From Bispira polyomma (Eukaryota): DNA of 64,000 nt. The position numbers and the translations under genes were made by a program. The first letter of the stretch is position 1. The number at the start of each line of letters is the position of its first letter. The notes below the pieces were generated by a model. The model worked only from the letters and a program-made list of their open reading frames with translations. It did no database searches and was not told where the DNA came from. The DNA is taken from NCBI GenBank assembly GCA_965649765.1, contig OZ287753.1, positions 77,872,001 through 77,936,000 of the forward strand, given 5' to 3'. Positions 20,701 to 52,603 of this stretch are shown piece by piece.

Positions 20701-23700
20701 GTGTAAAAGTGCTTGTCACTAGGTTTTCTCAGAAAGTATTCATCATAGCTCAATGAAATTTGGTATGTACCTTGGTAAGGCAATTTTCAGGACGGGAGAC
20801 GCGTAACTTTTAAAGAATAGCCTGAATTTTTATTTATTTTTTACCCCATCCAAAAATATGCGATCGTTACTGAGATAAAACGATTTCAATTTCAAAAATT
20901 TTAAAAATTAAGGGTTTTTTTTAAAACGTCAATTATCTCTGAAACGGTGCTAGATAGAGCGATTTCGAGCTCATTTTCGACCCACAGGGTTGATTTTGTT
21001 TATATGTAAACTTTCACGAAATTTTCAATTTTGGCGGCCATCTTGAATTTCTGCGTCTTTTTTTTCGAAAATGTCCAATATCTCGGAAACAGTGCTAGAT
21101 AGAGCGATTTTGAGCTCATTTTTGATCTACAGGGTTGATTTTGCTTATATGTCAACTTTCAAAAAAATTTTCAATTTTGGCGGCCATCTTGAATTTCTGT
21201 GTCTTTTTCGAAAATGTCAGTTATCTCGGAAACGGTGCTAGATAGAGCGATTTCGGGCTTGTTTTCGACCCACGGGGTTGATCTTGCTTATATGTAAACT
21301 TTCAAAAAAAATTTCAATTTTGGCGGCCATCTTGAATTTCTGCGTCTTTTTCGAAAATGTCAAATATCTCAGAAACGGTGCTAGATAGAGCGATTTCGAG
21401 CTCATTTTCGAACCCAGGGTTGATTTTGTTTTTTGTAAACTTTCAAAAAAATTTTCAATTTTGGCAACCATCTTGCATTTCTGCATCTTTTTCGAAAATG
21501 TCCGTTATCTCAGAAACGGTGCTAGATAGAGCGATTTCGAGCTCATTTACGGCTCACAGGGTTGATTTTGCTTAGGTGTAAACTTTCAAAAAAATGTCCA
21601 ATTTTGGCGGCCATCTTTAATTTCTGGGTCTTTTTCGAAAATGTCCTTTATCTCGGAAACGGTGCTAGATAGAGCGATTTCGGGCTTGTTTTCGACCCAC
21701 GGGGTTGATCTTGCTTATATGTAAACTTTCAAAAAAATTTTCAATTTTGGCGGCCATCTTGAATTTCTGCATCTTTTTCGAAAATGTCAAATATCTCAGA
21801 AACGGTGCTAGATAGAGCGATTTCGGGCTTGTTTTCGACCCACGGGGTTGATCTTGCTTATATGTAAACTTTCAAAAAAAATTTCAATTTTGGCGGCCAT
21901 CTTGAATTTCTGCGTCTTTTTCGAAAATGTCAAATATCTCAGAAACGGTGCTAGATAGAGCGATTTCGAGCTCATTTTCGAACCCAGGGTTGATTTTGTT
22001 TTTTGTAAACTTTCAAAAAAATTTTCAATTTTGGCAACCATCTTGCATTTCTGCATCTTTTTCGAAAATGTCCGTTATCTCAGAAACGGTGCTAGATAGA
22101 GCGATTTCGAGCTCATTTACGGCTCACAGGGTTGATTTTGCTTAGGTGTAAACTTTCAAAAAAATGTCCAATTTTGGCGGCCATCTTTAATTTCTGGGTC
22201 TTTTTCGAAAATGTCCTTTATCTCGGAAACGGTGCTAGATAGAGCGATTTCGGGCTTGTTTTCGACCCACGGGGTTGATCTTGCTTATATGTAAACTTTC
22301 AAAAAAATTTTCAATTTTGGCGGCCATCTTGAATTTCTGCATCTTTTTCGAAAATGTCAAATATCTCAGAAACGGTGCTAGATAGAGCGATTTCGGGCTT
22401 GTTTTCGACCCACGGGGTTGATCTTGCTTATATGTAAACTTTCAAAAAAAATTTCAATTTTGGCGGCCATCTTGAATTTCTGCGTCTTTTTCGAAAATGT
22501 CAAATATCTCAGAAACGGTGCTAGATAGAGCGATTTCGAGCTCATTTTCGAACCCAGGGTTGATTTTGTTTTTTGTAAACTTTCAAAAAAATTTTCAATT
22601 TTGGCAACCATCTTGCATTTCTGCATCTTTTTCGAAAATGTCCGTTATCTCAGAAACGGTGCTAGATAGAGCGATTTCGAGCTCATTTACGGCTCACAGG
22701 GTTGATTTTGCTTAGGTGTAAACTTTCAAAAAAATGTCCAATTTTGGCGGCCATCTTTAATTTCTGGGTCTTTTTCGAAAATGTCCTTTATCTCGGAAAC
22801 GGTGCTAGATAGAGCGATTTCGGGCTTGTTTTCGACCCACGGGGTTGATCTTGCTTATATGTAAACTTTCAAAAAAATTTTCAATTTTGGCGGCCATCTT
22901 GAATTTCTGCATCTTTTTCGAAAATGTCAAATATCTCAGAAACGGTGCTAGATAGAGCGATTTCGAGCTCATTTTCGAACCCAGGGTTGATTTTGTTTTT
23001 TGTAAACTTTCAAAAAATTTTTAATTTTGGCAACCATCTTGCATTTCTGCATCTTTTTCTAAAATGTCCGTTATGTCAGAAACGGTGCTAGATAGAGCGA
23101 TTTCGAGCTCATTTACGACTCACAGGGTTGATTTTGCTTATATGTAAACTTTCAAAAAAAATTTCAATTTTGGCGGCCATCTTGAATTTCTGCGTCTTTT
23201 TCGAAAATGTCAAATATCTCAGAAACGGTGCTAGATAGAGCGATTTCGAGCTCATTTTCGAACCCAGGGTTGATTTTGTTTTTTGTAAACTTTCAAAAAA
23301 AATTTCAATTTTGGCAACCATCTTGCATTTCTGCATCTTTTTCGAAAATGTCCGTTATCTCAGAAACGGTGCTAGATAGAGCGATTTCGAGCTCATTTAC
23401 GACTCACAGGGTTGATTTTGCTTAGGTGTAAACTTTCAAAAAAATGTCCAATTTTGGCGGCCATCTTGAATTTCTGGGTCTTTTTCGAAAATGTCTGTTA
23501 TCTCGGAAACAGTGCTAGATAGAGCGATTTCGAGCTCATTTTCGATCTACAGGGTTGATTTTGCTTATATGTCAACTTTCAAAAAATTTTCAATTTTGGC
23601 GGCCATCTTGAATTTCTGTGTCTTTTTCGAAAATGTCTGTTATCTCGGAAACGGTGCTAGATAGAGCGATTTCGAGCTCATTTTCGACCCTGATGGTTGT

Positions 23701-35058: not shown

Positions 35059-38000
35059 CTATTTCTTACCTCTGCCTCCTCCTTTTTTCCCTCCTTTTTT
35101 CCCTCCTTTCTTTCCCCCACCCTTCCTTCCCCCACCCTTCATTCCCTTGGCTTTGCCCCCACCACGCCTACGTTTTTTCTTGGGTGCTTTTCCTTTCTTT
35201 TTGCCACCTTTCTTTCCACCTTTCTTTTTACCTTTCTCGCCTTTTCCTCTGCCCTTTTTTCCTTTACCTGCCCCCTTGGCCCGCCCTTTGCCAGCACCCT
35301 TACCCCTGGCCGCCCCACCCCGACCACCTCTCCCCTGTGACCCCCCTCTACCGCCTCTCCCCTGTGACCCCCCTCTACCACCCCTCCCACGTGACCCCCC
35401 TCTACCACCCCCTCTTCCCGCACCTCCTCCCCGGGCTACTCCACCACGCCCTCCTGGCTTAGCTACAGCTCCCCGACCCCCACCTACACCTCTACCACCT
35501 CCTGCACCCCTACCACGTCCTGCACCTCTACCACCTGGAGCACCTTTCCCACCTGGAGCACCTTTCCCACCAGGAGCACCTTTTCCACCTGGAGCACCTT
35601 TTCCACCTTCTTTACCACCACCTTTACCTTTTCCATCCTTGCCTTTCCCATCCTTACCTTTGCCTTTCCCATCCTTACCTTTGCCTTTCCCATCCTTACC
35701 TTTGCCTTTCCCATCCTTGCCTTTCCCATCCTTACCTTTGCCTTTCCCATCCTTACCTTTACCTTTCCCCTTGTCTTTGCCCCCCCCTTTCCCACCTTCA
35801 CCTCCTCCATCCCCACCGTCCCCTCCGTCATCATTGCCTCCACCCCCGCCCTGTCCTTGTATCAGGTCCTTGATCTCCTTTGCTGTACCCAACATCTCCA
35901 TAAGCCTGAGGGGCTTCTCCTCCTCTTTGGCTTGTTCCAGCCTTGGATCTGGGTTGGCTGGATACCTGGACTTGTGGTACTGTGGTGTGCCGTACCTCTG
36001 GCTACCATGTGGTGGTACCCTTTGGGATGTAGAGGCTCCGGAAGGATGATGATGGCCAGCAGAAGTCCCTTGATGAGGGCCACCACCCTGATGACCACCA
36101 TATGGTTGACCATACATGCCTTGACCACTCGCACCAGTTTGACCATACCTCTGTACTGCATTCTGACTTTGTCCTGGATGACCAGCTTCAGGTCGTGCTC
36201 CTTGACCATAACTATGGACACCTGCTGGACTATTTGCAGCAACTTGAACATGGGCGTCATGGCGATTCGGACCATGAGCTTCCTGCGGATAGCTTCCATG
36301 TTGACGAGGGTGATCATCTGATCTTCCGAATGGCGTGTTAGTGCCGTATTGGTCTCTAGGTCGGGAATCTTTACCATAGAGGATTCTCTCCGTGAGAGCA
36401 CTGGTCAGAGCACCAGTGACTTCACCGAGAATACCTGTGCACACATGAATAGATAGTGGAACCTCTATTATCTGAACAGACTCACATATGCTGGCTACTA
36501 CCATATTTGGGGTATACTGACAAATCAAACTGATTGGCAATTTTTATTTATTAATCAAAGATGTTTTTGTTACTGTAATGTACAAATTATTTTGCCTAAT
36601 TTTAACACCGGACTGTATAATTCATTAATTGCAGATCCATTTTTAGGGCAAAATATAGTATATTTTGCACAAAGGAGGACATAATACCAGAAATCGTTTG
36701 AGATTGCCGACGGCCTTATTGTGGGTAAATTGTTTGTCCACATCTACAAGTTTCATTGTTTCGGTTTCACAGGTGCTTATATTGATAAGGGACAAGATAC
36801 ACATATCAATATTATAAAATAAACATATCTTATTTTAGAGCAGGTCTGATGTTCTTCTGTATTTGATCAAACTAACACCTTTCCTCATCCTAGTATAACA
36901 TTTTACAGTGGTTTTTACTTGTAAATCCAAATATGTTGTTCATTGTCAATATATTGAATCAAACATTTAGAAAAATCTAACTGAAATAGATTGCTACATG
37001 CATGCAAAACGTGCTGAGTAATTATTCAGAAAATCATTCATGAATTTTCATTACTCCAAGTTACAAATCTTTCATATCTTTTCTGTACAAACCCTACCTC
37101 TTGTTTGTCCAGGCTGATAAAGTCTGCCGCCATAACCATCTCCGTCATATGGTCTCTCTACAACAAAATAAGACATTGGAAGATTGTAACTACACCCCAG
37201 ACGGGACAGCATCAAGTGTAGTAAATAAGACATTGGTAGATTGCAACTACACCATAGCTGTGACAGCCTCAAGTGTAGTAAATAAGACACTAATAGATTG
37301 CAACTACACCCTAGCTGGGACAGCATCAAGTGTAGTAAATAAGACACTGGTATATTCTAACTACACCCTAGCTGGGACAGCATTAAATGTAAATAAGACA
37401 CTAATAGATTGTAACTACACCCTAGCTGGGACAGCATCAAATGTAGTAAATAAGACACTGGTAGATTGTAACTACACCCTAGCTGGGACAGCATCAAATA
37501 AATTACACATTGTCATGTCTTTCTATCTCTGTGTATCTGTATTAGTGAAATAAATATATGACAAAAAATAGATATAACTAGACCTAGCGCATCAGAGAAC
37601 AAGTGCATATTTGTATCCACCAGAAAGATGAACTACCCTAGGTAGCAAGTACCCTAGCTAGCACCTAAGCTAGAAGCATATGATTTCCTATAGCGCATTC
37701 ATGCTAAAGCCTTAAATGGCACAAGTGGGTTTCACATTGCAAAACTGTGGGACCAATAATAAGTGTGAGATAGGCACTTTAAAGTTTGGCCTATCCGTTT
37801 GACCTTGCAAATGACCTTGAACGAGGGGCTCAAGGCCAAATCGTACCACATCAAAAGATTCCCAGGCCATGATTTCTTATAGGTTGGTTTTACATCCATA
37901 TCTTGTTTGACCAAAAATAAGCGAGATATAGGCACTTTTAAGTTTGGCTATCCGCATTCAACCTTGAACGAGGGGCCCAAGGTCAAATCTGAGCACATCA

Positions 38001-41000
38001 AAAGATTTCCTGCTTATGATTTTTTATAGGTTGGTTTCAGATCCCAAACGTTTAGGTCCAATATTAGGCCAGATATAGGCATTTTTAAGTTTGACCAAAA
38101 TCGGTCACTTAGGGGTACTTTGGGACTCTGTCGATGACCTTGAATGAGGAGATTCAATGTCAATTGTCTGCATGCTTATACAGGACAGATATATCGTTAA
38201 ACATATCACCTGTAAAGAGATTCAACCTTCTACAGCTGAGAAACAGACACAGTTAAAAGCCTGATTATTTTCAAAAAAAGGCCCGTGGTGGCCATGTTGT
38301 TTTTCAAAATGAGGCCAAAACAACCACTAAAACTAATACACTCAAAGGTGAACATAACCACTGAATTAAAACACTTCTCTCCGGGCACATAAAAACTTTC
38401 AAACGTGTACTAAAACCCTTAAATATCAAAAGTTTGCCTGAACATAATGCATACCACCTAATTTTATGGTTCAATGTGGTTTGATTATCATTTTCTATTT
38501 AAAAAGCCCTAACTTTTACACTATACATACTTTTGGCGGCACACTTTTTAATTACCTTGTTCATGTCGCTTCTGTTCATAGGATCTATCAGAACCATCTC
38601 TTCTGTTAGAGACTACAATTAAAATAAGACATGTATAGTAGGCATCAGAGCACCGTGGGAGAAAGCAAGATTTTGTATGGATAATAGAAATACAATAAAA
38701 TAGAAAAGGCATTTTGGTGATAAAACAATAGTAAAAACAGACTTATCAGAGTTCTTAAAGGTGAATATTTGAAACAGTTTGTATAATAGAGTTTCTACTG
38801 TACGTACAGCATAAACTTAGAAATCGCTCTATCTCATGCTATTTCCAAGATAACAGACTTTTTTGGAAAATGCTCAGAAATTCAAGATGGCTGCCAAAAT
38901 CAGACAATGTCTTAAAAGTTGCTATACACTCCTCAAAATGTGCCCTGTGGGTCGAAAATGAGTTGGAAATCGCTCTCTTTCCCACTGTTTTGGAGATAAC
39001 AGATGTTGTTTTGAAAACCCTGAATTTTGGACATTTTCAAACCTCATATCACCATATCTCAGTAACAATCGCACATTTTTTGACAGGTTAAAAAATCAAT
39101 GAAAATGGAGTCTTTTTTCCAAAACGTTCACGCGGCATATACTGGTCTAAAATAAAAAATAAAACAAGATGTGAATGCCTGAATGGGCCTATTGTCAGCA
39201 GAAAAAAAGCAAGTCAGTTAAATGGAATTACAAGTGATCCTTTTTAAAATACAACACAAAATACTGGAAATGTACATTTATGACCCCAGTTTGACTTAAA
39301 TCCAAAGACGAATGTCTAATCAGAACAGTGCATTCGATTGCCTCACCCTGGGTTCATATTGGCTCAAATTATATTCCAAGTCTCTAAACCCAACAGTTAA
39401 TGAAATATTTGACATTTTATGAAACTGAACAAACAAATTTAAATTCATAACCTTAAAATTACAAAACTGAGCACTATGCCATGAGCAATTTTAATATACA
39501 TGTGGTAAGGTATATGTATGCAAAATTACAGACTGATCACTTCAGTGGTTCTAGAGAAAAAGATTGCCAAAGAAAGTGCCGTTTGTACAGAAGATATTCA
39601 AAGAAGACCATGCAGTAGCAAGAAAACCAGACGTGAAAACAAATAAGCACCTTTTTTAAGGGACACTTAATTACCTTGTTCATGTCGCTTCTGTTCATAA
39701 GATCTGTCAGAATCATCTCTTCTGTTAGAGGCTAAAATCAAAGTAAGACATGCATAGTATGCAACTGATCATGTTGAGAGATAGTAAAAAAAAAAAAAAA
39801 TGTAAATGCCAGGGTTATAGTCTGATATCACTACTCTTGAGGTCCTAGCTGACTTTACAGTTTACACCCCAGCCTGGGTTCTTTCACTTGTCAACCAATT
39901 GTTCAGTCTCAGCTCCCTCAGGGAGCATACTAGTAATGTTGCCACATACGGCACACAAAGACTAACACCCATTAGCAGCCAGGTACCCATTGATACACCT
40001 GGGTAGAGAGGAACAACTTTGTATAGGGCACCTTGTCCAAGGGTACAATCTCCAGGCCGCAGGAGAGGATAGAACCCTGGCTCTCAAGATACCTGAGATT
40101 AAAAGTCTGACACCCTAACCATTAGACCACAGATAGCAAGATTTTGTATGGATAATAGAAGGTCCGTCAAATAGAAGAGGCATTTTTGTGATAAAAAGAT
40201 AGTAAAAACAGACATTTGAAAGACTAACAGAGAGTTCTTAAAATTACATATTTGTCAAATAAAAGTTTGTATAATAGAGTTTCTACTGTAGGTACAGCAT
40301 TAGTGGTGTCATCACAGGCGACGATTGCACACATTCACCGGTGATAATGTGCCGGGGTGATAATTGGGAGTTTACAAATGTGCGCAATGCATCTCACAAA
40401 AAAATGATTATATATATACATTTGAAGCACATGGATTAGAAAGTAAAATATTTTGCAATATATATTTTATCAAATATCTATATACCTTGGAAGTAAACAT
40501 ATATACATATCTTATATACCATCGAGGATCCGACGTCTATATTAGAAGGAAGCAATTAACGAAACTTCCCGAAAATGGCTTTGATCTTTAACTCCGGAAC
40601 ATATATTAGTGTATGATATTTGAAGGAAGCAATTTACCGAATTTTTTCGTGGAATAAATTAGTGATCTCACCAGCTGTTTCATTGATGGATATTATGCTG
40701 CACTGTACGTATACTTGCTCGTTAGGAGCACCCCAAAGCACCAACTTCCAAAAAGGATATTTAACTTTGACTCGGCAGTAATCACTCACATACAGGGGGG
40801 GGGGACAGCGATTCGCTCGAAATTCACGGAATTTTAACAAATATGAGTAAAAGAACAAAAAGTTGAGGCAATTTACTGGTAATTTGTGAAGGTCGTTTCA
40901 TTGCATATAAATCTGACTGGTATCCAGATACATTAAGGTACTTCTGATGAATTTTAACCACAAGTTAGAAACTAAAGTCACTGGGTTAATATAGATTAGA

Positions 41001-44000
41001 ATTGGACAGCATTTCGCCATTTTCAAACAATAGCAAAATATTTAGATTAAAATATTACCAATAAGTTTGATTAACAATAATAATTATATTATGAAATAGT
41101 TTATGTACACGATACACAATATGAGAAACAGAAAAAAAAACCCCAATACAGCCCAATAACCAATCATTAGTACTGTCTAATCATCAACCTCAAATTTTGT
41201 GCAGTACCACTGTTTATTTAGCGGTACTTTAAATTCATTTAAAATTTATTTAGGCAGACAGTATTCAATATATTTGTGGTGTAGGCATGTGTATGTTATA
41301 TGATGTTACAATGCGAAAATAATTCCTTTAAAATGAATATTATACAGTGATTAGGTGTAATAACCATATTAATGGTAAAATGCTGTCCACCACGAATTGC
41401 TGTCTCCCCCTGTATATTACCTTATATCTGTTTTTTTAATGCTGTGGTTATTATATACGCAGATATACTCTCAGATATTCAAACTACAATATAACAATAT
41501 ATGTTAGGTGATCTCCTACATACACAGCAAACACAAGTTACAGGTATAAGTTATTTTAATTTATGTGACTGCAACCTATAAAAACAAAGTCGGGGATATA
41601 ATTATTTAGAACCTTAGCAAAATATTTTACTTTCAAAATGACGATAAATACCGCGATATCGCTCACGGTCCACTCTACAACATCGATCTGCAATATAAAT
41701 TGGCGATGTCACCACTATACAGCATAGACTTAGAAATCGTTCTAAAAATTAAATATTCGGAAATAAAAGTTTGTATAATAGAGTTTCTACTGTAGGTACA
41801 GGATAGACTTGGAAAGAATCTTAAAATTAAGTATTCTGAAATAGAAATTTGTATAATATGCTATCCTACTGTAGATACAGGATAGACTTAGACTGTGTTG
41901 GGAGAGATTTAGTTTGGATAAGAGAAGGTTTACATAAAATAGAAGAGGCAAATTAGTTTTTCAGTAAACAAGAGGAAAACATATATATTTGGAATAGTCC
42001 AAAGGGGGAGTTTATAAAATTGCCTATATTGGATAATAGAAGGTACCAATAATTAAGACTGCTGCGAATATACACAAATATGTATTCAAAGCTTCGTTGG
42101 CCATTAATCTATTTGGTATTCAGTATTCGATGAATAGTAAAACTATATAAATAATAAATATAAATTACAACTATATTATTTTATCACTAAAACCTTATGG
42201 TTCGCTGTATTTAACCAAATATATATCCATATAAATAAAGATCAGTGAGTGTACACTAACTTAAAGTCATTTTATTTCATTGTAAGGACTATTGGTTATC
42301 TTTAAGTATATTGGTACGTTCAAGTGTCTCAGTACCTGCATCTATCCAAGGAAACAAACTTAAAACAAAGCTATACTGTTAAAAGCACATATATTCAAGA
42401 CGTAAGCACGAAAGCATGGCTAAATCAAATAGGTTATTTTAGGAAGACCCTTAGAAGTTTTTATACATAATAATGTTTTGGTGTAACTATAATTCATTTA
42501 CTTAAATATGTATTTATTGACTTGTAACAGGCTTCTTCCGATTATCAATTTGCATATTTTGTATTCAAGTAATTGTTTTACTCTCGTTGTGGATTATTAT
42601 TTTGCTATTCGTGGCAGTCTTACCGATAATAAAGGTTCTACTATCATTCTTTACATATACACCACTGGGGTAGTAGTTTTACCAGTATCTATATTGATCC
42701 TTCCTGACAACCTACCCTGTTGAGACCTCTCAGATGGTTGCCTTCTGTCAGATGGAACTCTCTTCATACGGGGGGAATGATAACCTGATTACAATTAGAC
42801 AGTAAAACTCTATTAAAATAGAACTAATGAATTTTCCTTAATATATCTTTAATGAAAAAATTCAATGAAACTACATTTAAACACAGGAATTTTTTTTCAA
42901 ATAGTTTTAAATGTTTAACTTACTTTGTATCTGTCAATGGAAGTTGGAGCTGCAATAAAATTTCACCTATTTTCACCAATGTCCAGTTCTTATTCACTTC
43001 ACAAAGAAACTGAGTTTGACTAATGAAAAATTAATCAGTTGACAGATAAATAAAACACATTTAAATTTTCTTTGGAGATTAATTTCCACTATGGTACCTG
43101 ATTAGTCAAGAACAATTTCTATGAAAAATCCCAGGTGAAATAAACAAAAACTGACAAAAAAAACCTGGAATTTAGGTAATTAAGGCAAAATAGTCACAAA
43201 AATCTCAATTTTAGCAAATATTACCCACAATTCTACCAAAAACACAACATTTTCTATATGCAGTGGCGAATTTTGAACTCCTTACTCTGACCTTTTCTTC
43301 ATTGCACAATTAAGTGTAGCCAACCAGCACTATTAACTGTCATTCATTTACTTGAAGACAGAGGCTAGAGGATGACACCATTTATATCAATGTCCCGATG
43401 GTCATTTAGCCTGCCACTGGGAGGATGGGACCCAAAGACAGAGAACAATGCCATTGTCAGTAAGTCATCCAAGCCACTATATATCTGCCTGTATCTGTTC
43501 ACCTAAGGTTCCTTTAGCCTGCCACTGGGAGGATGGGACCCAAAGACAGAGAACAACATCATTATAAGTAGGTCATCCGAGCCACTAGATATCTGCATGT
43601 ATCTGTTAGCCTCAGGCTGGGATCGAACTGAGGTCCTATGTTTCTAAGTGAGTGTGTTACCCACTGGGCCACAGTGGCAGATAAAAGATAGAATGTACTT
43701 GAGTGTATAACATTTACGTGAAGCAATTATTTGTACGAAACAATTAATAGCATTCAAAAGGAAATGTTGTTATTGTAACAATTGCACCACTCCTGCATTG
43801 TTTATAATTGTAATATTATAATACAGGCAAATCAATTTAAGTAGAACTCCGATAAGTGGAATTACCTGTTATGTAGAAGTTATTTAAAAGTCCCATTGCT
43901 ATATTTTTAATTCAAATTTACCCTGTTAAATAATATTTCTATTAATTAGAACAAATTTTTATGCTCCCTTTAGATTCGACCTAACAGGTTTCCACTGTAC

Positions 44001-47000
44001 ATATTGAAAAAAAATATATATATAAAATAAAAAATAATAATATAACACTGAACACTTTAACCTGATTCAGAGATAACTGTTGCTCTGTCCCGATTGGCCG
44101 ATTCCTTTCTTATCAAAGTGTCGATTTGTTTGGTAGAAGAACCTTGCAGTGACGAAGGTAGAGATTTAACTCTGGCGAGACTTGTGGCAGATCTTAATGG
44201 GGAGGTCTGTCTGTTAGGGGTCGAGCAGAACTCTGAAGAATACAATAAAAAGTCAATTAACTCTTTTTGCCCTTAGCTTGTCAACAAGTAGTTGACAGCA
44301 TTCGTTACTCTTAGAACCTATGTCTATCGGCAAGCAGTCGACACCCAAAAAAATATTATTTTAAGTTAGTTCCTCACAATAGGAAATTGTTAGTACAGCA
44401 GACTTATACATGAGACCGCTCTTGAATGCTGGAAGTAATCTCTGATGTGTGTGTTTTAGTGACTCCAACTATCTGTAACCAATTACCCAAAACAATTTCC
44501 TTCAGTTCCCGGGGAGGTCTATTCGTAGACAACTGCCCACGAACCAGGATTTGCTGATGTGACAAATACTGCCTACTACATGATAGCTTTCCTAATTTCA
44601 GTCAAACAATTTTTTTAATAAATTCCAATTTTTATTAAATATTTGCATCTTCAAATCTTCTAGTTTAGCAACTAGCTTTTGGTCGTCATACATATTTCAA
44701 TTTTTTTTGTAATTCCATGTTTAAAGAACATGAGTGTCTTGAATTGGAATATATATAGCTTTTAGTGGATAATAGAAGAATATTGATGGTAAGGAGGTTG
44801 CTATCTGTAGTTAAATATCCTAGAATGTATTCCAAAGGAGCCAGCATTATATTAATACCTGTCTTGGTTTTAATCCATGCTTCTACCTGTTTCCAAAAAT
44901 TAAGAGTAACAGGACAAAGAGAGAAGAGATGAATTATAGATCCTGGGGAGGATTTACCCAGTTAGCGATTCAGAGATGAAACTATACATATTTTATTAAG
45001 TAGTTTCTGGGTACCAAGAATACGATGCAAAATTCTATACTCAAATCAAATAAGGTAGTTGTCCTGGATTGTTTTAAAACATGTTTTTAATGCCTGTTGC
45101 CATGTACCTTTATCAATATTCATGTCTAGCTCAGCTTTCCATATATTTTTAAAGTTCATGTCAAAGCAGGTCTTATTCAAGATTTTATAAAATCGTTTGG
45201 CTCCTTGGTTGTGACAGAACAGGACTGACAATTGATTTGGTAGACAAGGTTGTTCAAAGTTAAACTTTAAGTAGGCCAAAGATCAAATCCAAGAATTTTA
45301 AGAATATTTCTCACTCATGGTTAAGATAACTGCCAAAAATAATTTTGTTCGATATTATATTGAAGGGGATATTGAAGGAAGACCATGTGACGGCGGCAAG
45401 GAAAACTAGAGGTGAAACCAAATAAGCGCCCTTTTCAAGGGACGCTTAATAAAGATACTGGAATTCCGAAAACACATGCTATTTATTGCAAACCAGTATA
45501 AAACTATATCTATTGAATCAAAAAATAGTTTTTTTGTTAGTAAACTATTGATATTTGAGAGTTTTTGGCACTTCTTACTTGTTTCTGTGCCTAATGCACA
45601 TGTTTTAATTTGATTTTCGATTACTTCCTGTTCTTGAGGTTCCGTTCCATTTCCAGTATTTGGGTTGGATTTGGTTGTTGTGCCTTAGAATCCACTAGTA
45701 TGGAGAGTAAGCGCCATTATGAAATATATTAGATTAGATTATTTCCAGTTAAAACAATGGGTGGGCCCGAATATCAGATGTAATGTACTTCCAGCAGTTA
45801 CTCAACTTTCACTCAAGTCCCATCCTAGGGCAAGGTGGGCATTAACTGTTACCTCACCACGATTCACCAGTAAACACGAGTCGAGTGGCCCCCCCGAATG
45901 TAGCACAAGTTCTAGTGGGCATAACCACGATAGGCCGAGCTGCCAGGCACAACTTATAACCTCTAATTGCAAGTAGCAGATCCAATGAATTAATGCCATA
46001 TATTGATAGATTAATTTTTTGGGTGGTATCACTGAAACAGAAATCGTTTTTGACAAGCGATATATCTCGGACCCGAATTCTTGCTACCCACTAACTAAAA
46101 GCGGGATTTAAAATGTAGGTACGTAAAGAGTAGAAGTAAGTGTACAACAAACTCACCAGGTGTAAATGCCATGGCCTCTTCATCCTTATCATACACTCTG
46201 GAGTATTTCTTGTGTACTCCAGGTCCACTACGGATTGAGGAGAACCTGCGTAAACTACCACCGGGGGAGCGGAATCGTCTCTGAGAAGACTGCACGCTGT
46301 ACACTTCACTTCCTGCAAATATGGAATGCTCAAATAAGACAAATATAGTACTGTTTAAGTGGAACTATTAACTGAAACAACAATGTCACTATACTTCATA
46401 GTAGGGTGTGTAGTGTGTTGCTTAGAAATCAGTAGTGCGATATACACGTACTTCGATAATCCATTGACAATACGTGTAGCAATTTGCAACATATTGAATC
46501 GTAAAAACTTTGCCAAAATTAGAGCCAGTTTTAAAATCAAATGACTTTCTGTCCGCGTACAAAAGCTTCCACAGTAAAAAATGGAATCAGTAATGTTAGA
46601 AAACTGTAAACATGATAAAAATCAAAGCAATATTTAATTGATTTAATGTAGACTATAATTGCATTGTTTTACTTCTGATTCTATTGCTAACACATATCTC
46701 TTGTATGCTTTCACACTTTATTTCTAGAATACAAGAAGTAAGCAATATTTTAAGATTTTATGTAAAAAATTATTTATCCAATATGTATCGCTTTTCCAAT
46801 TTTGTATTGCACTATGTTGTAATTGAAAACATATATTGGGATATTCAATATATGGTTGCAACCTTATGATGCAATCACACTGTCCCAGTTCTCGCCATGT
46901 TTATACCAGTTTACTCCTGATCATTAGAACTTGGATGGTCGCGAGAGCATTGGGAAAAAATGTTCTTTTGCATTTGCATATCCTGTTTATGCACAGTTTT

Positions 47001-49302
47001 GACCAGATCTTACCAGTTTATGACGAGTTTATACCCATACCAGATCAGATCAAAGCAGTTCATCACACATTCATGTAACATTCGCTTCAGATTACACTAA
47101 ATTACACCAGTTCTGGCCAGATCACACGAGTTCTAAGCAGTTTAAGCCCTGTTTACACAAGTTCTTAAGCCCTGTTTATGACCTGTTTATGCTCCGACCA
47201 CACCTCTCATCTCTAGACGGCTGTGGCAATGTAAACGCCCTTATCACACTGCCGCTACTAGTTTTTATGGCTTTAATTTGGGGATAAACCACTTCAAAAC
47301 ATTTTTAGATCAATAAAACTCCACTTATGACAGTTCTGTTTGAGACTGAATTGCTCAAGAACAGAAACCAAAAACCGGAAAGATAGTAATGACCACACTT
47401 CAAATTATTCCTCAATTAAAAAAATCCACTTCTCACAATTGTCGTTTCTTTTGTAACCCTACATAAGCCACGTTCGACTGGTAGGAAAGATACTTATCTT
47501 ATTTAATCTAAAAGAAGGGTAAGTATCTCTAACCGTTCGTCTGGTCAATATTCAAAAAAAGATAAGTACCAAAGTTATACACATATCTCGGTGGTTAACT
47601 TTCTAAACAAACCACGTGACTGCCTTGAAAATATAAGGTTTTGATAGGTTTTAGTAGAGAGCACTCTGAAGTTTTAACTTCCATATAAGGATATTTAGTT
47701 GTCTTTGATTTTCGACTAGGCAACCACCATGTATTACGTTTTATATAATGATGATAATATAATTTAATATGCCCTTAAATGTACACAGATTTGCGTGAAT
47801 ACTTATATTATATGGCTGCATTATTAATCAAATAGGTTAGCATTTCGAAAAGTATTGTTTTTTTTTGTAGAATATTGCTATATTGCCCATTATGTACATG
47901 GTATACTTTGAGTCTGTTCTTCGCCAATTTCCATTTGCCTCCGGTTATAGATACTTATTTTTCCTGTGCGACTGCTAGCAAAATAGTTAAGTATCTCTGT
48001 CACTGCGCAGGTAGGCCGAGTTTGCAGATAAGTATCTGTAACCCTACCAGTAGAACAGCCAAATAGACTCACTTTTGGTGAGAGGAACCATGTCATCTGG
48101 TCTGTCTGCCACATCTAAACCACCCATCTTGAAAAGGTAGCCTGGAGAGGGTGCAGCGGGGAAACCCCAGCCGATAGCAATGTTAGTGGTCCGTTCAAAG
48201 TATCGCAGACAGAAAAGATATAATATCTATATTAAAAAAAAAAAAACAAAGATAAAAAAACAATCATATTAAATTTGTGGAAAGAAGATTTAGCAACACT
48301 GTAATATACCATATTACATTGCACTTTTTAATCCTCAATAAACTATTGTCAAAAAAATGGTGGAACTGCAATGTTAAATATAAATACAAAGAAGACGGGG
48401 AAACATTCAAGGGAATTACGCAGCCCACACTTATGCTTGCCCACTATCTTGGGACCAAACAGGTAGTTATGAATGAGGCTAAACTCTGGAATTCACTGGA
48501 CAGGCAGAACTGTACCGTAGAATTGTTCCAAAATTAGAGACACACAGTAGGCGTAAGTTCATTTGCTGTTCTGACTGTATATTTTGTTTCCTTGAGTAAA
48601 TGCAACTTTTGTGTGACTTTGCCTCCTTTTTTGCAATAATTTGTAGGTAATCCATTCGATCTGAATCTACTGCAGAGCTACGTTCTGAGAAAGATCAAAA
48701 GATTACTGAACGGGTTACGACTCAGTGCATTTGACAACCGAATCCTATGAACTATGAATCTAGGTTTGACGGATTGTGTTTGTGAAATATTCCCAGTATT
48801 GAGGAGATGTTTAGGGGGAATTAGAACATACCTGCATTATTAAGGCAGTTACAAGGAAGCCTGTCAAGTGTTGAACCACCGCACTCAACAACAATCCGGC
48901 CGAGGAGTCATGCCCAGTGAAGTGCATGGCAATCTGATTCCAGTTCACTTTCGCCATAATGACGGAGATGAAGAAAAGCACCACGAACACTGCCCGTGCG
49001 ATAATATAAGGAAGCAGAAACTTGGCTCGCCGTTCACGTGTCTCCCACTTGATGCAATCGTAGATGAGCTTGGCACCGGCACAATGTGACGTCAGGCAGA
49101 ACACGGCCACAGCCATGACAAACTGCAGGGAGCCTACGGGCAGGGACGTGTCCTCTATTGCATTGTGTGTACGAAGATTGGACACTGCCAGGGAACTGGC
49201 AATAACAACGGACACATTCTCCACCAACAGAACAATCTCGGCTACCAGAAGGAAGACCGCCAAACGGCGGCGAGCCTTTTCTGTAAAATTAAGCTTACAC
49301 AT
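35059..49302 (-). CDS. Peripherin-2/ROM1-like four-TM protein lacking the EC2 loop, with a long disordered and polybasic Gly/Lys/Arg C-terminal tail (about 891 aa long form; about 367 aa if the 26-nt exon is included)
   Basis: Exons (minus): 49302-48832, 48226-48073, 46312-46157, 45683-45579 (weak AAG acceptor), 44232-44062, [42949-42924, 26 nt], 42784-42716, 39731-39675, 38612-38556, 37157-37098, 36434-35059. Matches to recalled PRPH2: KLNFTEKARRRLA vs KVKFDQKKRVKLA; GAKLIYDC..FLLPY vs AGKICYDA..WLKPY; LRYF..PSPGYLF vs LRYL..ESQGWLL. The TM part and the tail part are each well supported; their linkage in one mRNA is inferred from phase-1 continuity. Confidence 0.75.
37165..37500. repeat. Minisatellite, about 60-bp unit x6
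   Basis: aaataagacactggtagattgtaactacaccctagctgggacagcatcaagtgtagt is repeated; this explains ORFs 37072..37347 and 37101..37553. Confidence 0.9.
38820..39150 (-). repeat. Inverted 1-2 monomer relative of the 142-bp satellite
   Basis: aaatcgctctatct..cagaaattcaagatggctgccaaaat..ccctgtgggtcgaaaatgag is the reverse complement of the satellite monomer. Confidence 0.75.
39785..40130 (-). mobile_element. SINE with Deu/Nin-like domain (related fragment at about 32090-32290 +)
   Basis: ctcagctccctcagggagcatac, caggtacccattgatacacctgggtagagagg, ccttgtccaagggtac, and a tRNA-like head ..ccctaaccattagaccac. It is flanked by agatag on both sides and absent from the paralogous duplicated block at about 38660. 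Confidence 0.7.
40301..41717. mobile_element. Non-autonomous hAT-like DNA transposon, 1417 bp
   Basis: TIRs tagtggtgtcatcac and gcgatgtcaccacta, with a perfect 8-bp TSD tacagcat (40293-40300 and 41718-41725). Confidence 0.85.
43380..43680 (-). mobile_element. SINE-like element with an internal tandem duplication of about 108 bp
   Basis: tttagcctgccactgggaggatgggacccaaagacagagaacaa occurs twice; tRNA-like end gggatcgaac..ttacccactgggccac. Confidence 0.55.
44600..45340 (-). mobile_element. 3' fragment of an L1/Tx1-like LINE
   Basis: KRFYKILNK..KNIWKAEL..WQQALKTCFKTIQDNYLI*FEYRILHRILGT is typical of the region before the C-terminal zinc finger in Tx1-like ORF2. Confidence 0.7.
46875..47240. 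mobile_element. Non-autonomous relative of the Harbinger element
   Basis: ccagttctggccagatcacacgagttctaagcagtttaagccctgtttacacaagtt is nearly identical to 14335-14392. Confidence 0.65.
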
Positions 49303-49590
49303 GGTTTATATATATAATTGTCTTTAATATTAAACGGGATCCGTTATATTATGTCACCATTTTCGTTTTGTTTGTTTCTGTTTGTGTCCGTTGTTTTCAT
49401 CTGTTTCCGTTTCTAGAGGAGTTTGACCTAGTTACAAACTATGACGTCATTCATGTGTTGTGTACAAGACGTCATAATAGGTTGGTTCGTATTTGCATAG
49501 TGACCTATTTAAACGTCACAAATGACGTAATAATCTTCGGCAAACTGAAGGATTAGTTTTATTACGTCGTCACCATATACAAACAGTTAA

Positions 49591-50467
49591 GGCTTTAGTA
49601 ACGTAAACACAAAAGACGATCGCGGATAACCACGTTATGTGTGCTTGAGCTTCTCAGAAACTGCACAACTTTTTCTTTGTGGCCTTAAACTCGATTTATG
49701 GATAACATATTTACATTTTCATGGGTGGAAATAATAAAGCATGACATCTATTTTAATTATATACTAATTCATATATTTTATGTGTCATTTTAATACATAT
49801 TTTCAGACATACAATGCATATAGTAGTGTGTAAAATTGTAACTAAAATGGGTAATATTTTCAATGTACATGCTTCACAAACGTGACACAATTCATATACC
49901 AAGCAGGGATCAATACTGAAGTATTGTACATGACTAGAAAAAGGAAAACATCAGCATTATTTTGAATGAATTCGTTTTTTAATTAAAGCACAAAAACTGG
50001 CTTATTTTAGAAAAACATTAAAGTTACACTCTTCTTAACAGAAAGATGTTTTATATTCTTTGTTTTTATAAAATAAGGAAACATATTGAAAAATGTAAAT
50101 CACTAGAAATAATATACATGTTCTATAAAGTTGTGTAACATATGTCTTGTGCTGATATAGGCTGGATCAATACTCGTATTATGTCACAATAGACAGGGCT
50201 CTCTCCGAGACTTGTTTACAAATATGACGTTCTACATAGATTTTCAAATTGTGTGACGTCACAACACAAGGATTGTTATATGGGTGTTTTTATAGTTTTG
50301 AAGCATATTATTAACCTTTTGAATTGTCTGGATACATAAAAATGGTTAAAATCCTTACTAAAGTGTACTTTTAAAGTCCTCATAGTTGATATATACAGTA
50401 GAAATGGCTCTCGTAAAAATAGCATGCTTTATTCCCGGCCCGTTTATGTGTTTACGTTACTAAAACC
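49591..50467. mobile_element. Kolobok-like non-autonomous DNA transposon (TTAA TSD), 877 bp
   Basis: ttaa|ggctttagtaacgtaaacaca ... tgtgtttacgttactaaaacc|ttaa; 21-bp TIR with one mismatch and purine-purine termini. Confidence 0.75.
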
Positions 50468-52603
50468 TTAATTTGGTGATACCGTATGTAGAATTTGTAA
50501 TGTCGAAAACACTGCGTGTACAAAAAATATTGACCTAAATGTGTAGATGAACGCAGTTTATCCTGCAAAACATTAATTGTGTCACTTGCACAAATATTCT
50601 ATAGCAGTCTACATTTTTTTAGCAATAGCCAATGTATTTTTTTTCTCAGAACCACTACACCCGTGGACATTGATTGGAACGATTTTTAAATAGATAATAA
50701 ATCAATATACCCACGTTCATATGTGTTTATATAATTTAGCCAGATTTTAGTTTTACTTCCAGATGCTTACTGTGTCTAGTAACTTTAGAAACGTGTATTA
50801 GAGCCTTGCAATTTTTATGTTCTTAGCATATGCATACATGCTGTGGAAATAAATCAACTGCACTGATCAAAGTCGAGCTTTGGCTTTGGGTTCATGATCA
50901 ACCTAGTGGTGTTAAGATCAGTTTTTCTTTATAGATAGTATTTTTGGAAATTCAATTTCAGTCGTTCAGTCGAGTTTTATGACCCATATAAATAGCGATT
51001 TTTTAAATTCTTTATCTCAATATATCAACTTTAGTATTGCTTTTTCACTGTTGAAATATACGTTATAAGCTTACAGGGAATTTGAATAAGTTTTCACCTT
51101 CAGCTGAAACACAAAAGTTAAAGTGGGAGACCCAATTTGTTATGTTTCTGAGACAACTTTATCTGGAAATGTTGTGTTGTATTGTACATACTTAATTTTT
51201 CATTTTTAGTGCACATTATTGGTGCAAGGCATGTTCTAAAGCGCAACAACAGAATCAATTCAGCAATCGAGAAGTTCATAGCACATATATATTTCGAATT
51301 TTTTAGGAAAAAGACAAACTGCCCTCAGCATTGAATATTTAGATAAATATTTTTGCATTAAAAAAACAAACAAAACATATTTGGAAAAGAAACCTTTCAG
51401 TTACCATTTACCATTTCAGCAGAACCGTTTTATCAAAGTTTTCAATACAAGATTTTAAGAGTGTTAAATTCTAAAGTTAATTGTTATAAATGGAAATTAG
51501 CAGAGAATCCAAATTGTAATTCATGCATGATGAGGAGATAGGTTTTTAGTTTTCTCCTGAACACATAAAATGTTTCTATCGGTCTAAGCTCAACAGGGAG
51601 ATTATTCCATAACAAAGGGGCAGCAATTGATGATTTTCTGTCTCATGCGCCTTAGAATCTGCTAGCACAGAGATAAGTGCTATAAAAGTTAGGATAGATT
51701 AGATTTGATAAAAGAGAAACGAGGGAAGGGTTTGTGGCTTGAATATAATCGAAATGCCGAAGTTTTCTACTTTTACATACACTTGTTTTCTTTTACTTGA
51801 AATGTCTTAGTTAATGGGTTTCAATGGATTTTAATCTTTTTAAAACATTCAGAAAGTATATCATTTTATGTTTTAGGACATATGCCTTTACATTTTTAGC
51901 TTCAATATTCACAGAGTGAGATAGTACAATTTAAGGTTTTCTCAATGTAGACTCCACACAGAACGTATATTGAATAGTAGTATCAATGGTAATGCTTTGG
52001 CTCCTATGAAGCTCTTTTTATGTATATGACAGAGTTTGTCAAATGAAAATAAAATGGCGTGGTTTGTTGTTGCAAGTAAAAATAAGTTATAAATTCTCCC
52101 ACTTTTGTTGTTATTTCTTTGGATGTGGGGGGGGGGGGGGATGTATAGGGAGGGAACTCAGGGTGGTAATCAAATTTAAAGACATAGGTTTTAAGTTTCT
52201 CCTAAACCCAGAAAGTGTTTCTAGTGATCTAAGCTAAACTGGGAGACTATTTCATGGCATATATAGGGGCAGCGATTAAGAAAACTCTAGATCCAGCCAT
52301 CTTGGTCGGTATAACCGAAAAAAAAAGTCGCTTTCCTTTTCTGCAGTTACTAAAGGAAAGACAAGCAGCAAAGTAGGACGGCTGTTGTGGGACAACAGTC
52401 TTGAAAGTGGTGAGATGTATTTCAAACAGAATTTGATAATGAATGGGAATATAATCTTTGTAACTAAGTTTACAGGAAGGTTCATTGATGTAACATTAAA
52501 AGTCAAAATAGGTTCCACAGATGATCTTGCAAAATTCTGCCACATGCCAATTATAATTACTTCCACCGAGGAGCTTGTATTTTGCTTGTGCCTGTTGGTG
52601 CGT

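What the first reader, a model, noticed from the sequence alone, without database searches (positions are those of the whole stretch)
35059..36434. Very large polybasic Gly/Lys/Arg low-complexity tail predicted to be fused to the peripherin-like membrane domain
Seen: a 1376-nt terminal exon with a modular layout. It runs from a G/Q/H/Y-rich prion-like segment to a short amphipathic helix (LRLMEMLGTAKEIKDLIQ), an acidic GGD linker, (GKGKGKD)n from a 21-bp unit, (GGKGAP)n, an RGG box (GGRGGSQGR)n and a GGKK/KKKRRR end. It links upstream through symmetric phase-1 exons to the TM exons, giving about 891 aa versus about 350 aa for ordinary peripherins. Inference: a membrane-tethered nucleic-acid or polyanion-binding brush, for example tethering chromatin, RNP condensates or microtubules to a curved membrane (spermatid, cilium) or a matrix/mineral template. 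I know no described tetraspanin-family protein with this architecture.
Basis: partly seen in the sequence, partly recalled or inferred. Interest (0 to 1): 0.88.

Follow-up and report, generated by a model that had tools for sequence, protein, structure and literature searches.

The report
Peripherin-like membrane protein, giant polybasic tail
A worm-like animal's genome encodes a four-pass membrane protein, distantly related to the eye protein peripherin but lacking its large outer loop. It carries a roughly 590-residue floppy tail ending in a very positively charged Gly/Lys/Arg brush; a distant relative keeps the same design, but no RNA data yet prove the join.

Summary
Window 36434-35059 (minus strand) is a 1376-nt terminal coding exon of 457 codons: 35% Gly, 15% Lys, 8% Arg, net charge +73. 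It has the modules described, built from 21-, 18- and 27-bp tandem units.

It is a real coding exon, not a chance open frame. A related species (ENA contig ctg29937l) has the same exon downstream of the same membrane exons. That copy shares the acceptor, the phase, the module order and the stop context, although synonymous sites are saturated. In both species only this one of six frames is open.

My model has six exons and 798 aa (822 aa in the relative), not about 891 aa. Every splice site and phase is shared between the two species.

"Peripherin-like" is half right. TM1-3 match peripherin-2 (profile E 2.3e-5, and the top fold hit). The large cysteine-rich loop that defines the family is absent, and Pfam Tetraspanin does not match.

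The join of membrane core and tail rests on comparative evidence alone. The only public runs found are DNA.

Most likely function (inferred): a cytosolic polycationic brush that tethers polyanions such as RNA, ribosomes or acidic membranes to a membrane. I class it as a new variant of a known kind.

Earlier notes from this scan call the genome an annelid. None concerned this locus.

The parts
48832..49302 (-). Exon 1. It runs from the ATG to ...ATGCAG|gtatgt: 157 codons, phase 0 to 0. It encodes the basic N-terminus, TM1-3 and the first half of TM4. This is the peripherin-2-like part.
   Evidence: ORF. Donor conserved in the ortholog. 69% aa identity to the ortholog. Profile hit to 7zw1_A peripherin-2 at E 2.3e-5. 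AF2 model with four helices, pLDDT 82.
48073..48226 (-). Exon 2: 154 nt, phase 0 to 1. It encodes the rest of TM4 and a highly conserved juxtamembrane motif, FERTTNIAIGWGFPxAPxPGYLF.
   Evidence: Acceptor and donor conserved in the ortholog; 65% aa identity.
46157..46312 (-). Exon 3: 156 nt, symmetric phase 1. Ser/Arg-rich linker with RRFRS and RRFSS motifs.
   Evidence: Splice sites and phase conserved in the ortholog; 48% identity.
44062..44232 (-). Exon 4: 171 nt, symmetric phase 1. Ser/Thr-rich linker.
   Evidence: Splice sites and phase conserved in the ortholog; 45% identity.
42716..42784 (-). Exon 5: 69 nt, symmetric phase 1, encoding GYHSPRMKRVPSDRRQPSERSQQ. This is the weakest exon of the model.
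   Evidence: Good donor (gtaggt) but a weak acceptor tract. The candidate ortholog exon has the same phase and clean splice sites, but the tblastn E-value is only 0.65.
35059..36434 (-). Exon 6, the finding itself: 1376 nt, 457 codons plus the stop. It is a terminal exon entered in phase 1.
   Evidence: The ortholog exon L007:14352-15830 has its acceptor at the same codon, has a stop and no ATG upstream in frame, and keeps the same module order and stop context.
36379..36432 (-). Conserved helix 1 at the start of the tail exon: ILGEVTGALTSALTERIL (IIGEVTGVIANTLADRLL in the ortholog).
   Evidence: AF2 helix over residues 2-18, the best pLDDT of the tail at about 76. Conserved. Low hydrophobic moment.
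35917..36378 (-). Disordered G/P/Q/H/S/Y-rich segment with conserved islands ANSPAGVHxYG and QRYG.
   Evidence: Composition; pLDDT 40-50; conserved islands.
35851..35916 (-). Helix 2, PLRLMEMLGTAKEIKDLIQ. The ortholog has GLLERLQKLKDEIAG.
   Evidence: AF2 helix over residues 173-194; aligned; not amphipathic by hydrophobic moment.
35794..35850 (-). Acidic Gly/Asp/Glu linker with net negative charge.
   Evidence: Charge profile. The ortholog has an NDEEGEGGEGTDD linker at the same place.
35620..35793 (-). (GKGKGKD)n / (GKGKD)n array built from a 21-bp unit.
   Evidence: TRF period 21, 6.5 copies, 88% matches. The short-read unitigs break here (table 8).
35522..35608 (-). (GGKGAP)x4 array built from an 18-bp unit.
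   Evidence: TRF period 18, 4.8 copies, 92%. The ortholog has GGRGAPGG/GGRGGPGG repeats instead.
35323..35521 (-). RG/RGG region, including (GGRGGSQGR)x3 from a 27-bp unit.
   Evidence: TRF period 27, 3.2 copies, 91%. The tail has 11 RGG and 20 RG motifs.
35062..35322 (-). Lys-rich end (GKK/GGKK repeats and KKKRRR) with net charge of about +40.
   Evidence: Charge profile. The ortholog ends ...GRKGGRGRKGGKK.
34920..34925 (-). Putative AATAAA polyadenylation signal, 134 nt after the stop.
   Evidence: Read directly from the sequence. Its use has not been tested.

Best explanation
**What it is.** The stretch is the real 3'-terminal coding exon of a six-exon gene on the minus strand (49302-35059). 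The gene encodes a four-pass membrane protein of about 798 aa.

**Membrane core.** The core (exons 1-2) is a divergent relative of the peripherin/RDS branch of tetraspanins. It has lost the large cysteine-rich extracellular loop: TM3 and TM4 are joined by a handful of residues.

**Tail.** Everything after TM4, about 590 aa, is predicted to face the cytosol and is almost wholly disordered. In order, it contains:
- a conserved juxtamembrane motif;
- a Ser/Arg-rich linker with RRxS-type sites, carried on three skippable phase-1 exons;
- a G/P/Q/H-rich segment flanked by two short conserved helices;
- an acidic hinge;
- a 260-aa polycationic brush (GKGKGKD, GGKGAP, RGG and K-rich modules).

**Inferred mechanism.** The membrane core concentrates the protein in a membrane. 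The brush binds polyanions electrostatically and with low sequence specificity. RNA or ribosomes are the most likely partners, as for the basic repeats of ER protein p180/RRBP1. Acidic lipid surfaces are the alternative. Phosphorylation of the linker and methylation of RGG arginines are probable controls.

**Shown here.** The exon, its frame, its conservation and the shared exon-phase structure.

**Inferred.** The splicing of tail to core, the topology and the binding function.
For: **The exon and its frame.** One frame is open for 457 codons in the window and 489 codons in the ortholog. All other frames are closed.

**The ortholog tail.**
- It lies 24.7 kb downstream of the orthologous TM exon on the same strand.
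- The acceptor is conserved to the codon: cag|GT ATT CTC GGT GAA GTC ACT GG in the window against cag|GT ATA ATT GGT GAG GTG ACT GG in the ortholog.
- Upstream in frame the ortholog has a stop and no ATG, so the exon must be entered by splicing in phase 1.

**The rest of the gene.** Exons 1-5 have conserved splice sites, and all donors from exon 2 onward leave phase 1. Both species give one uninterrupted CDS of 798 and 822 aa.

**Selection.** Synonymous sites are saturated (pS 0.75-0.83), while pN runs from 0.20 in exon 1 to 0.39 in the tail.

**Conserved architecture.** The order helix, disordered segment, helix, acidic linker, K/D-rich, G-(K/R)-G-A-P repeats, RGG, K-rich end is the same in both species. 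The repeat units themselves differ.

**Membrane core.** A profile of exon 1 and its relatives hits only peripherin-2 in the PDB (E 2.3e-5). The AF2 model is a four-helix bundle (pLDDT 82) whose top Foldseek hit is PRPH2 (TMq 0.66).

**Disorder.** The tail is disordered apart from two helices.

**Precedent.** The membrane-anchored lysine-rich and basic-repeat domains of p180 bind RNA directly (PMC3362647).
Against: - No transcript evidence exists. No RNA run holds the locus, and the three holders are genomic DNA with even depth across intron and exon.
- Orthology of exon 5 is weak (E 0.65). The last intron is long: 6.3 kb here and 5.3 kb in the relative. A short unconserved first exon of a separate tail gene could hide there.
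- Only two species carry the family in 1.8-5.8 billion searched proteins. Conservation therefore rests on one comparison.
- pN is biased downward because the codon alignment follows a protein alignment of low-complexity sequence.
- Function is inferred from composition alone. Neither helix is amphipathic by hydrophobic moment.
- Topology was not tested on the joined protein.
Confidence: 0.6

Rival explanations
1. There are two genes. The membrane gene ends in an undetected terminal exon, or by read-through after exon 4 or 5. The tail is a separate gene with its own short, unconserved first exon somewhere in 42715-36435.
For: - There is no RNA evidence either way.
- The last intron is long and full of repeats.
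- Read-through of the exon 4 donor in the window stops after two codons (...ES G stop). A short isoform is therefore possible.
- The tail evolves much faster than the core.
Against: - The tail exon has no usable start. In the ortholog there is an upstream in-frame stop and no ATG.
- Exons 2-5 all have conserved donors that need a downstream phase-1 acceptor. The tail acceptor is the only conserved feature downstream in both species.
- The read-through sequences after exons 4 and 5 are not conserved.
- Order and strand are the same in two species whose introns are otherwise unalignable.
Confidence: 0.15
2. The protein is the same, but the polycationic tail acts as a membrane zipper rather than an RNA tether. 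It would bind acidic lipid head groups of an apposed membrane. That would compact or stack membranes from the cytosolic side, as myelin basic protein does, and would replace the lumenal contacts that peripherin makes through its lost loop.
For: - pI is 10.9, net charge +73, and the tail is fully disordered. These are the physical traits of membrane-compacting basic proteins (established knowledge of MBP).
- The core descends from a family that shapes stacked, curved membranes.
- The loop used for lumenal oligomerisation is missing.
Against: - The tail has no Pfam match to any family (no family at E up to 1).
- RGG repeats are more typical of RNA binders.
- A 590-aa tail is much longer than needed to bridge a compact cytoplasmic gap.
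- There are no expression or localisation data.
Confidence: 0.15
3. The open frame is a by-product of purine-rich minisatellites and is not translated.
For: - The distal 800 nt is 81% purine and only 10% T, which lowers stop-codon frequency.
- The antisense strand also has long open stretches.
- The repeat arrays differ between species, which shows rapid turnover.
Against: - Other sense frames carry 6-36 stops, and only one frame is fully open in both species.
- The non-repetitive first 190 codons (19% T) are also open and share motifs with the ortholog.
- The acceptor, the stop context and the module order are all conserved despite saturated synonymous sites.
Confidence: 0.03

Closest known systems
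Peripherin-2 (PRPH2/RDS) and ROM1, the RDS branch of tetraspanins
   Same: - It is the only PDB family hit by the exon-1 profile (7zw1_A, E 2.3e-5, TM1-3, including the basic N-terminal K-x-x-F-x-x-K-x-R-x-K-L-A motif region).
- PRPH2 is the top fold match for the four-helix bundle.
- Both have a cytosolic disordered C-terminal tail.
   Different: - There is no large extracellular loop and no CCG...PxxCC...C...GC cysteine pattern. PMC2965184 lists that pattern for RDS.
- There is no Pfam PF00335 match.
- The tail is about 590 aa, against about 60 aa in PRPH2.
- A canonical relative with the loop does exist in another invertebrate (P0002/L004). The loop has therefore been lost in this lineage.
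p180 / RRBP1, the ER ribosome- and mRNA-binding protein
   Same: Both are membrane anchors followed by a long cytosolic, lysine-rich, tandem-repeat basic domain. In p180 the lysine-rich region binds RNA directly, probably through the phosphate backbone (PMC3362647).
   Different: - p180 has a single N-terminal TM helix, a decapeptide repeat and a C-terminal coiled coil. Here there are four TM helices, Gly-rich 6-9-residue units, RGG boxes and no coiled coil.
- There is no sequence relationship: Pfam finds no family in the tail.
- The resemblance is of mechanism, not of family.
RGG/GAR domains of RNA-binding proteins (fibrillarin, nucleolin, FUS class)
   Same: The tail has clustered RGG/RG repeats in a Gly-rich disordered context (11 RGG and 20 RG). 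A Gly/Gln/Tyr-containing low-complexity segment lies next to it.
   Different: - There is no RRM, KH or other folded RNA-binding domain.
- The domain is membrane-tethered.
- It is Lys-dominated (K 15%, R 8%) in this species but Arg-dominated in the relative.
Myelin basic protein and the basic cytoplasmic tails of myelin tetraspan proteins
   Same: Both are extremely basic and intrinsically disordered, and both are associated with a four-pass membrane protein context.
   Different: There is no homology. The tail here is far longer and Gly-rich. There is no evidence of expression in glia or in stacked membranes.

Membership tests
Peripherin/RDS-ROM tetraspanins | Four transmembrane helices in a tetraspanin-type bundle | tested here: met
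   The AF2 model of exon 1 has helices 8-50, 57-84, 86-128 and 134-156, with pLDDT 82. The top Foldseek hit is PRPH2 7zw1_A with TMq 0.66, although E is only 0.25. The second half of TM4 lies in exon 2 and was not modelled jointly.
Peripherin/RDS-ROM tetraspanins | Sequence similarity to PRPH2/ROM1 | tested here: met
   A profile of exon 1 plus three relatives, searched against all PDB chains, gives a single hit: peripherin-2 at E 2.3e-5, residues 12-126 (TM1-3 only).
Peripherin/RDS-ROM tetraspanins | Large extracellular loop (EC2/LEL) with the CCG...PxxCC...C...GC cysteine pattern | tested here: not met
   The TM3-TM4 connection is about 5 residues in the model. No CC-containing exon exists anywhere in 34000-50000 on the coding strand. 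The exon 1 to exon 2 junction is conserved in the ortholog, with a 605-nt intron and no room for loop exons. The cysteine pattern is taken from PMC2965184.
Peripherin/RDS-ROM tetraspanins | Pfam PF00335 (Tetraspanin) above its gathering score | tested here: not met
   Neither exon 1 nor the ortholog exon matches PF00335 at E up to 1. A genome-wide PF00335 scan lists 25 other places but not this locus. The distant relative P0002 does match (38.9 bits).
Peripherin/RDS-ROM tetraspanins | Cytosolic C-terminal amphipathic helix | tested here: inconclusive
   Two helices are predicted in the tail. Their hydrophobic moments (0.12 and 0.08) are below the shuffle means.
RGG/GAR box | Three or more closely spaced RGG repeats in a Gly-rich disordered region | tested here: met
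   The window tail has 11 RGG and 20 RG motifs; the ortholog has 9 RGG and 25 RG. The tail is disordered.
RGG/GAR box | RNA binding and arginine methylation | not testable with these tools
   This needs biochemistry.
p180/RRBP1-type membrane-anchored basic repeat proteins | Sequence homology to the RRBP1 Lys/Pro-rich or repeat region | tested here: not met
   The Pfam scan of the 457-aa tail and of the 489-aa ortholog tail found no family at E up to 1. The resemblance is in architecture only.
p180/RRBP1-type membrane-anchored basic repeat proteins | Membrane anchor followed by a long cytosolic tandem-repeat basic domain | tested here: inconclusive
   The repeats and the charge are shown. The link to the membrane anchor rests on the comparative gene model. 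The cytosolic orientation is inferred from tetraspanin topology.

The most novel reading that the evidence does not exclude
A peripherin-derived membrane shaper has swapped its lumenal oligomerisation loop for a cytosolic electrostatic brush. It would staple or space apposed membranes, or anchor an RNA-rich condensate layer to them, from the cytosolic side. That would make it a single-chain counterpart of a 'tetraspan protein plus basic protein' pair. If the organism is an annelid, as earlier notes of this scan suggest, candidate sites are the stacked photoreceptor membranes or the myelin-like sheaths of giant axons. I know of no described molecular components for those sheaths (my own recollection, not searched here).
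Probability: 0.1. Interest if true: 0.8.

Novelty: new variant of a known kind. Interest (0 to 1): 0.5.

Why it matters
**Departures from the family.** Tetraspanins, including peripherin, are compact proteins of about 250-350 aa. Their defining functional part is the large extracellular loop. [quoted passage not shown] This gene breaks both rules. The loop is gone, and a cytosolic disordered tail about ten times the usual length has been added. That tail ends in one of the most cationic stretches one is likely to find on a membrane protein.

**Evidence of selection.** The module order survives between two species whose synonymous sites are saturated, while the repeat units themselves have turned over. 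Selection therefore appears to act on charge pattern and composition rather than on sequence. This is a clean natural example for the study of disordered-region evolution.

**If the fusion is confirmed.** It would offer a simple test case for how cells tether polyanions (RNA, ribosomes or another membrane) to a membrane. It would also add a protostome-lineage offshoot of the peripherin family, where the 2010 phylogeny found no reliable member.

**Limits.** The family is very narrow (two species found), and nothing is known of its expression.

Tried and rejected
**RNA evidence.** The look-up of sequencing runs found no RNA holder. The three runs laid turned out to be genomic unitigs with even depth over intron and exon, so they give no splice information. 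The exon 5 to exon 6 intron (6.3 kb) would not have fitted the 6000-letter limit in any case.

**Database searches for the tail.**
- The search for homologous proteins on residues 1-200 found nothing. It missed even the ortholog, which shows the tail is too divergent for word-seeded search.
- The ESM Atlas gave no usable hit.
- Pfam found no family.
- The own genome has no second copy of either half of the tail.

**Searches for more family members.**
- phmmer of exon 1 against 1.84 billion representatives gave 3 hits.
- The search for homologous proteins gave 1 hit.
- A metagenome contig scan with the profile gave none.
- P0003 sits on a 2.6-kb contig, too short to show a tail.

**Extra exons.** No further collinear conserved block exists between the exons, upstream of exon 1 or downstream of the stop.

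**A hidden EC2 exon.** None was found.

**Antisense proline-rich ORF (35147-36049, + strand).** It is not conserved as an open frame in the ortholog.

**Amphipathic-helix reading.** It is not supported by the hydrophobic moment.

**Literature.** No paper links peripherin-2 with annelids, and none of the papers sharing at least three of the four search terms contains 'RGG' alongside tetraspanin.

**Joined model.** Exons were searched one by one by reference. Joining was done only inside local scripts, to count codons, check the frame and compute per-exon distances.
Full report
**1. The observation**

On the minus strand, the acceptor ...tgtgcacag|GTATTCTCGG lies at 36435/36434 and the stop TAG at 35061-35059. 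The exon is 1376 nt. Entered in phase 1, it reads 457 codons.

Tandem Repeats Finder confirms three arrays:
- a 21-bp unit, 6.5 copies, 88% matches: GKGKGKD;
- an 18-bp unit, 4.8 copies, 92%: GGKGAP;
- a 27-bp unit, 3.2 copies, 91%: GGRGGSQGR.

The tail is 35% Gly, 15% Lys and 8% Arg, with pI 10.9 and net charge +73. Almost all of the positive charge sits in the last 250 residues, behind an acidic hinge.

**2. Is it coding or a chance open frame?**

The distal part is 81% purine and only 10% T, so a chance open frame had to be excluded. Only one of the six frames is open throughout; the others carry 4-33 stops.

The decisive evidence is comparative. Exon 1 of the upstream membrane gene has one close relative in 1.84 billion protein representatives (P0001, 69% identity). 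It lies on a 390-kb contig of an ENA assembly (ERZ22147071, ctg29937l). I walked that contig in four steps.

On the same strand, 24.7 kb downstream of its exon 1, I found a 485-aa called gene (L007:14373-15830). Its translation has the same order of parts:
- the start helix IIGEVTGVIANTLADRLL;
- a disordered G/P/Q-rich stretch with ANSPAGVHNYG and QRYG;
- the helix LLERLQKLKDEIAG;
- the acidic linker NDEEGEGGEGTDD;
- a K/D-rich stretch;
- GGRGAPGG-type repeats, then RG/RGG;
- an end reading ...GRKGGRGRKGGKK.

The acceptor is conserved to the codon. The ortholog has an in-frame stop and no ATG upstream of it, so the exon can only be entered by splicing in phase 1. In the ortholog too, only this frame is open, for 489 codons.

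The two species are far apart. Synonymous differences are saturated (pS 0.75-0.83), and introns do not align apart from shared satellites. Non-synonymous differences are 0.20 in exon 1 and 0.39 in the tail. The tail estimate is biased downward, because the codon alignment follows a protein alignment of low-complexity sequence. Pairwise BLASTP of the tails is weak (29% identity, E 0.004). What is conserved is a handful of motifs plus the charge and composition pattern. The repeat units themselves differ, which indicates array turnover under selection for composition.

**3. Gene model**

Collinear conserved blocks between window and ortholog resolve into exons with conserved splice sites and phases.

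| Exon | Window coordinates | Phase |
|---|---|---|
| E1 | 49302-48832 | 0 to 0 |
| E2 | 48226-48073 | 0 to 1 |
| E3 | 46312-46157 | 1 to 1 |
| E4 | 44232-44062 | 1 to 1 |
| E5 | 42784-42716 | 1 to 1 |
| E6 | 36434-35059 | 1 to stop |

Counted in a local script, the six exons give one open frame of 798 aa in the window and 822 aa in the ortholog. Identity falls along the gene: 69, 65, 48, 45, 44 and about 30-43%.

E5 is the weakest element, with a poor acceptor tract and ortholog similarity at E 0.65 only. Because E3-E5 are all symmetric in phase 1, the frame holds with or without any of them. They could act as cassette exons (inference).

Each exon was handled by reference.

**4. Is the tail really joined to the membrane exons?**

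There is no RNA evidence. No RNA run holds the locus. The three runs that do hold it are genomic DNA: depth is even at about 15x, 11x and 92x across exon and intron, and one unitig spans 35731-37434 across the acceptor.

The case for one gene is therefore indirect:
- The tail exon has no start of its own and needs an upstream phase-1 donor.
- Exons 2-5 each have a conserved donor that leaves phase 1 and needs a downstream acceptor.
- Sequence beyond those donors is not conserved, and nothing else downstream is conserved.
- Order, strand and phases are identical in two species with otherwise scrambled introns.

A separate tail gene with a short, unconserved first exon in the 6.3-kb last intron cannot be excluded. 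I give that about 15%.

**5. The membrane core**

Pfam does not recognise exon 1 as a tetraspanin. A genome-wide PF00335 scan lists 25 other places but not this one.

A profile of exon 1, its ortholog and two distant relatives (alignment A1) hits exactly one PDB family. That hit is peripherin-2 (7zw1_A) at E 2.3e-5 over TM1-3.

The AF2 model of exon 1 (pLDDT 82, pTM 0.74) is a four-helix bundle with very short connections. Its top Foldseek match is again PRPH2 (TMq 0.66), although the E-value of 0.25 is not significant on its own.

One distant relative, P0002, is a canonical member. It matches PF00335, has the CCG motif, and its next exon carries VPKSCC and TM4. The window gene is the only match to P0002 in its genome.

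In the window gene and its ortholog, the large loop is absent:
- TM3 and the next helix are about five residues apart in the model.
- The exon 1 to exon 2 junction, across a 605-nt intron, is conserved.
- No CC-containing exon exists on the coding strand.

The family-defining loop (cysteine pattern as listed in PMC2965184) is therefore tested and not met. The protein is best called a peripherin-derived, loop-less four-pass protein, not a peripherin.

**6. The tail as a structure**

AF2 on the first 217 residues of the exon gives pLDDT of about 45 throughout, except for two helices at residues 2-18 and 173-194. Both helices are conserved in the ortholog. Neither is amphipathic by helical hydrophobic moment: 0.12 and 0.08, below the shuffle means.

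Exons 3-5 carry RRFRS, RRFSS, RVKS, RKES and similar basophilic-kinase-type motifs. Their role as phosphorylation sites is an inference.

The tail has 11 RGG and 20 RG motifs. Lys dominates here (36 KG), whereas Arg dominates in the relative (8 KG, 25 RG).

**7. Topology and mechanism (inferred)**

The basic N-terminus (KLNFTEKARRRLA), the basic TM2-TM3 loop (WETRERRAK) and the RYFER after TM4 follow the positive-inside rule and tetraspanin topology. This places the whole tail in the cytosol, which argues against an extracellular matrix or mineral role.

A membrane-anchored, disordered polycation of net +73 will bind polyanions. The nearest studied analogue is ER protein p180/RRBP1. Its cytosolic lysine-rich region and 54 basic decapeptide repeats follow a membrane anchor. 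The lysine-rich region binds RNA directly, probably through the backbone (PMC3362647). This is a resemblance of mechanism only, since the tail matches no Pfam family.

The main functional rival is binding to acidic lipids of an apposed membrane, in the manner of myelin basic protein. That reading is attractive because the core descends from a membrane-shaping family that has here lost its lumenal contact loop. Chromatin or microtubule tethering cannot be excluded.

**8. Novelty and context**

- I found no paper that links peripherin-2 with annelids.
- None of the papers sharing at least three of the four search terms contains 'RGG' alongside tetraspanin.
- The 2010 tetraspanin phylogeny found RDS orthologs in invertebrate deuterostomes but no reliable protostome member.
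- Earlier notes of this scan call this genome an annelid. I did not test that, and none of those notes concerns this locus.
- The family is very narrow in the databases searched: two species with the tail, plus two distant relatives of the core.

I class it as a new variant of a known kind, of moderate interest. It is limited by the lack of any expression or functional data.

Noticed in passing
window 33470-33982 and 37725-38093; also ortholog contig (L003 20242-21057, L007 about 13270-13890): A 147-bp satellite flanks the tail exon on both sides. Its word depth in the genomic runs reaches 10^5-10^6, against about 15-90 for single-copy DNA. The same satellite family, at 75-87% identity, occurs in the related species, including just upstream of its tail exon.
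   Followed up: partly
window 20916-24012: A 3.1-kb array of a 143-bp tandem repeat (21.7 copies, 87% matches, with 284/427-bp higher-order periods). An 82-bp core matches the ortholog contig on the opposite strand at 75-79% identity.
   Followed up: no
window 37166-37500: A 57-bp minisatellite (5.9 copies) lies in the last intron, 0.7 kb upstream of the tail acceptor. Read on the minus strand, it gives repeated LMLSQLGCSYNL peptides with no sign of coding.
   Followed up: no
window 36455-36480 and about 40135-40142: Genomic unitigs of all three runs show loose ends and short 'joints' between these two places. Local depth rises to about 280-1400 at 36300-36499. A dispersed repeat seems to end 20-45 nt upstream of the tail exon's acceptor. 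Earlier notes on this genome describe copied splice junctions ('mirages'); I did not check whether this is one.
   Followed up: no
L004 (ENA ERZ23498666 scaffold_105094), 256-930 and 975-1310: A canonical peripherin-like tetraspanin gene of an unknown invertebrate sits in a marine 'metagenome' assembly. It has at least one intron, a CCG motif, VPKSCC and TM4. It is the closest loop-bearing relative of the window's gene, at 29% identity over TM1-3.
   Followed up: partly
window 2702-3130, 60636-61913: These ORFs look like reverse-transcriptase and retrotransposon pol fragments. The ortholog contig also carries an RVT_1-like ORF upstream of its exon 1 (L003 4164-5996).
   Followed up: no
window 52276-53051, both strands: A Pro-rich/Gly-rich repeat block (TTFFGPYNPP... 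on the minus strand, GGLYGPKKVVV on the plus strand) is open in several frames. It lies 3 kb upstream of exon 1. Its nature is unknown.
   Followed up: no
window 48073-48226 (exon 2): The juxtamembrane motif FERTTNIAIGWGFPxAPxPGYLF is the most conserved stretch of the whole protein outside the TM helices (22 of 24 residues identical). It matches no Pfam family. It is a candidate binding or re-entrant segment.
   Followed up: partly
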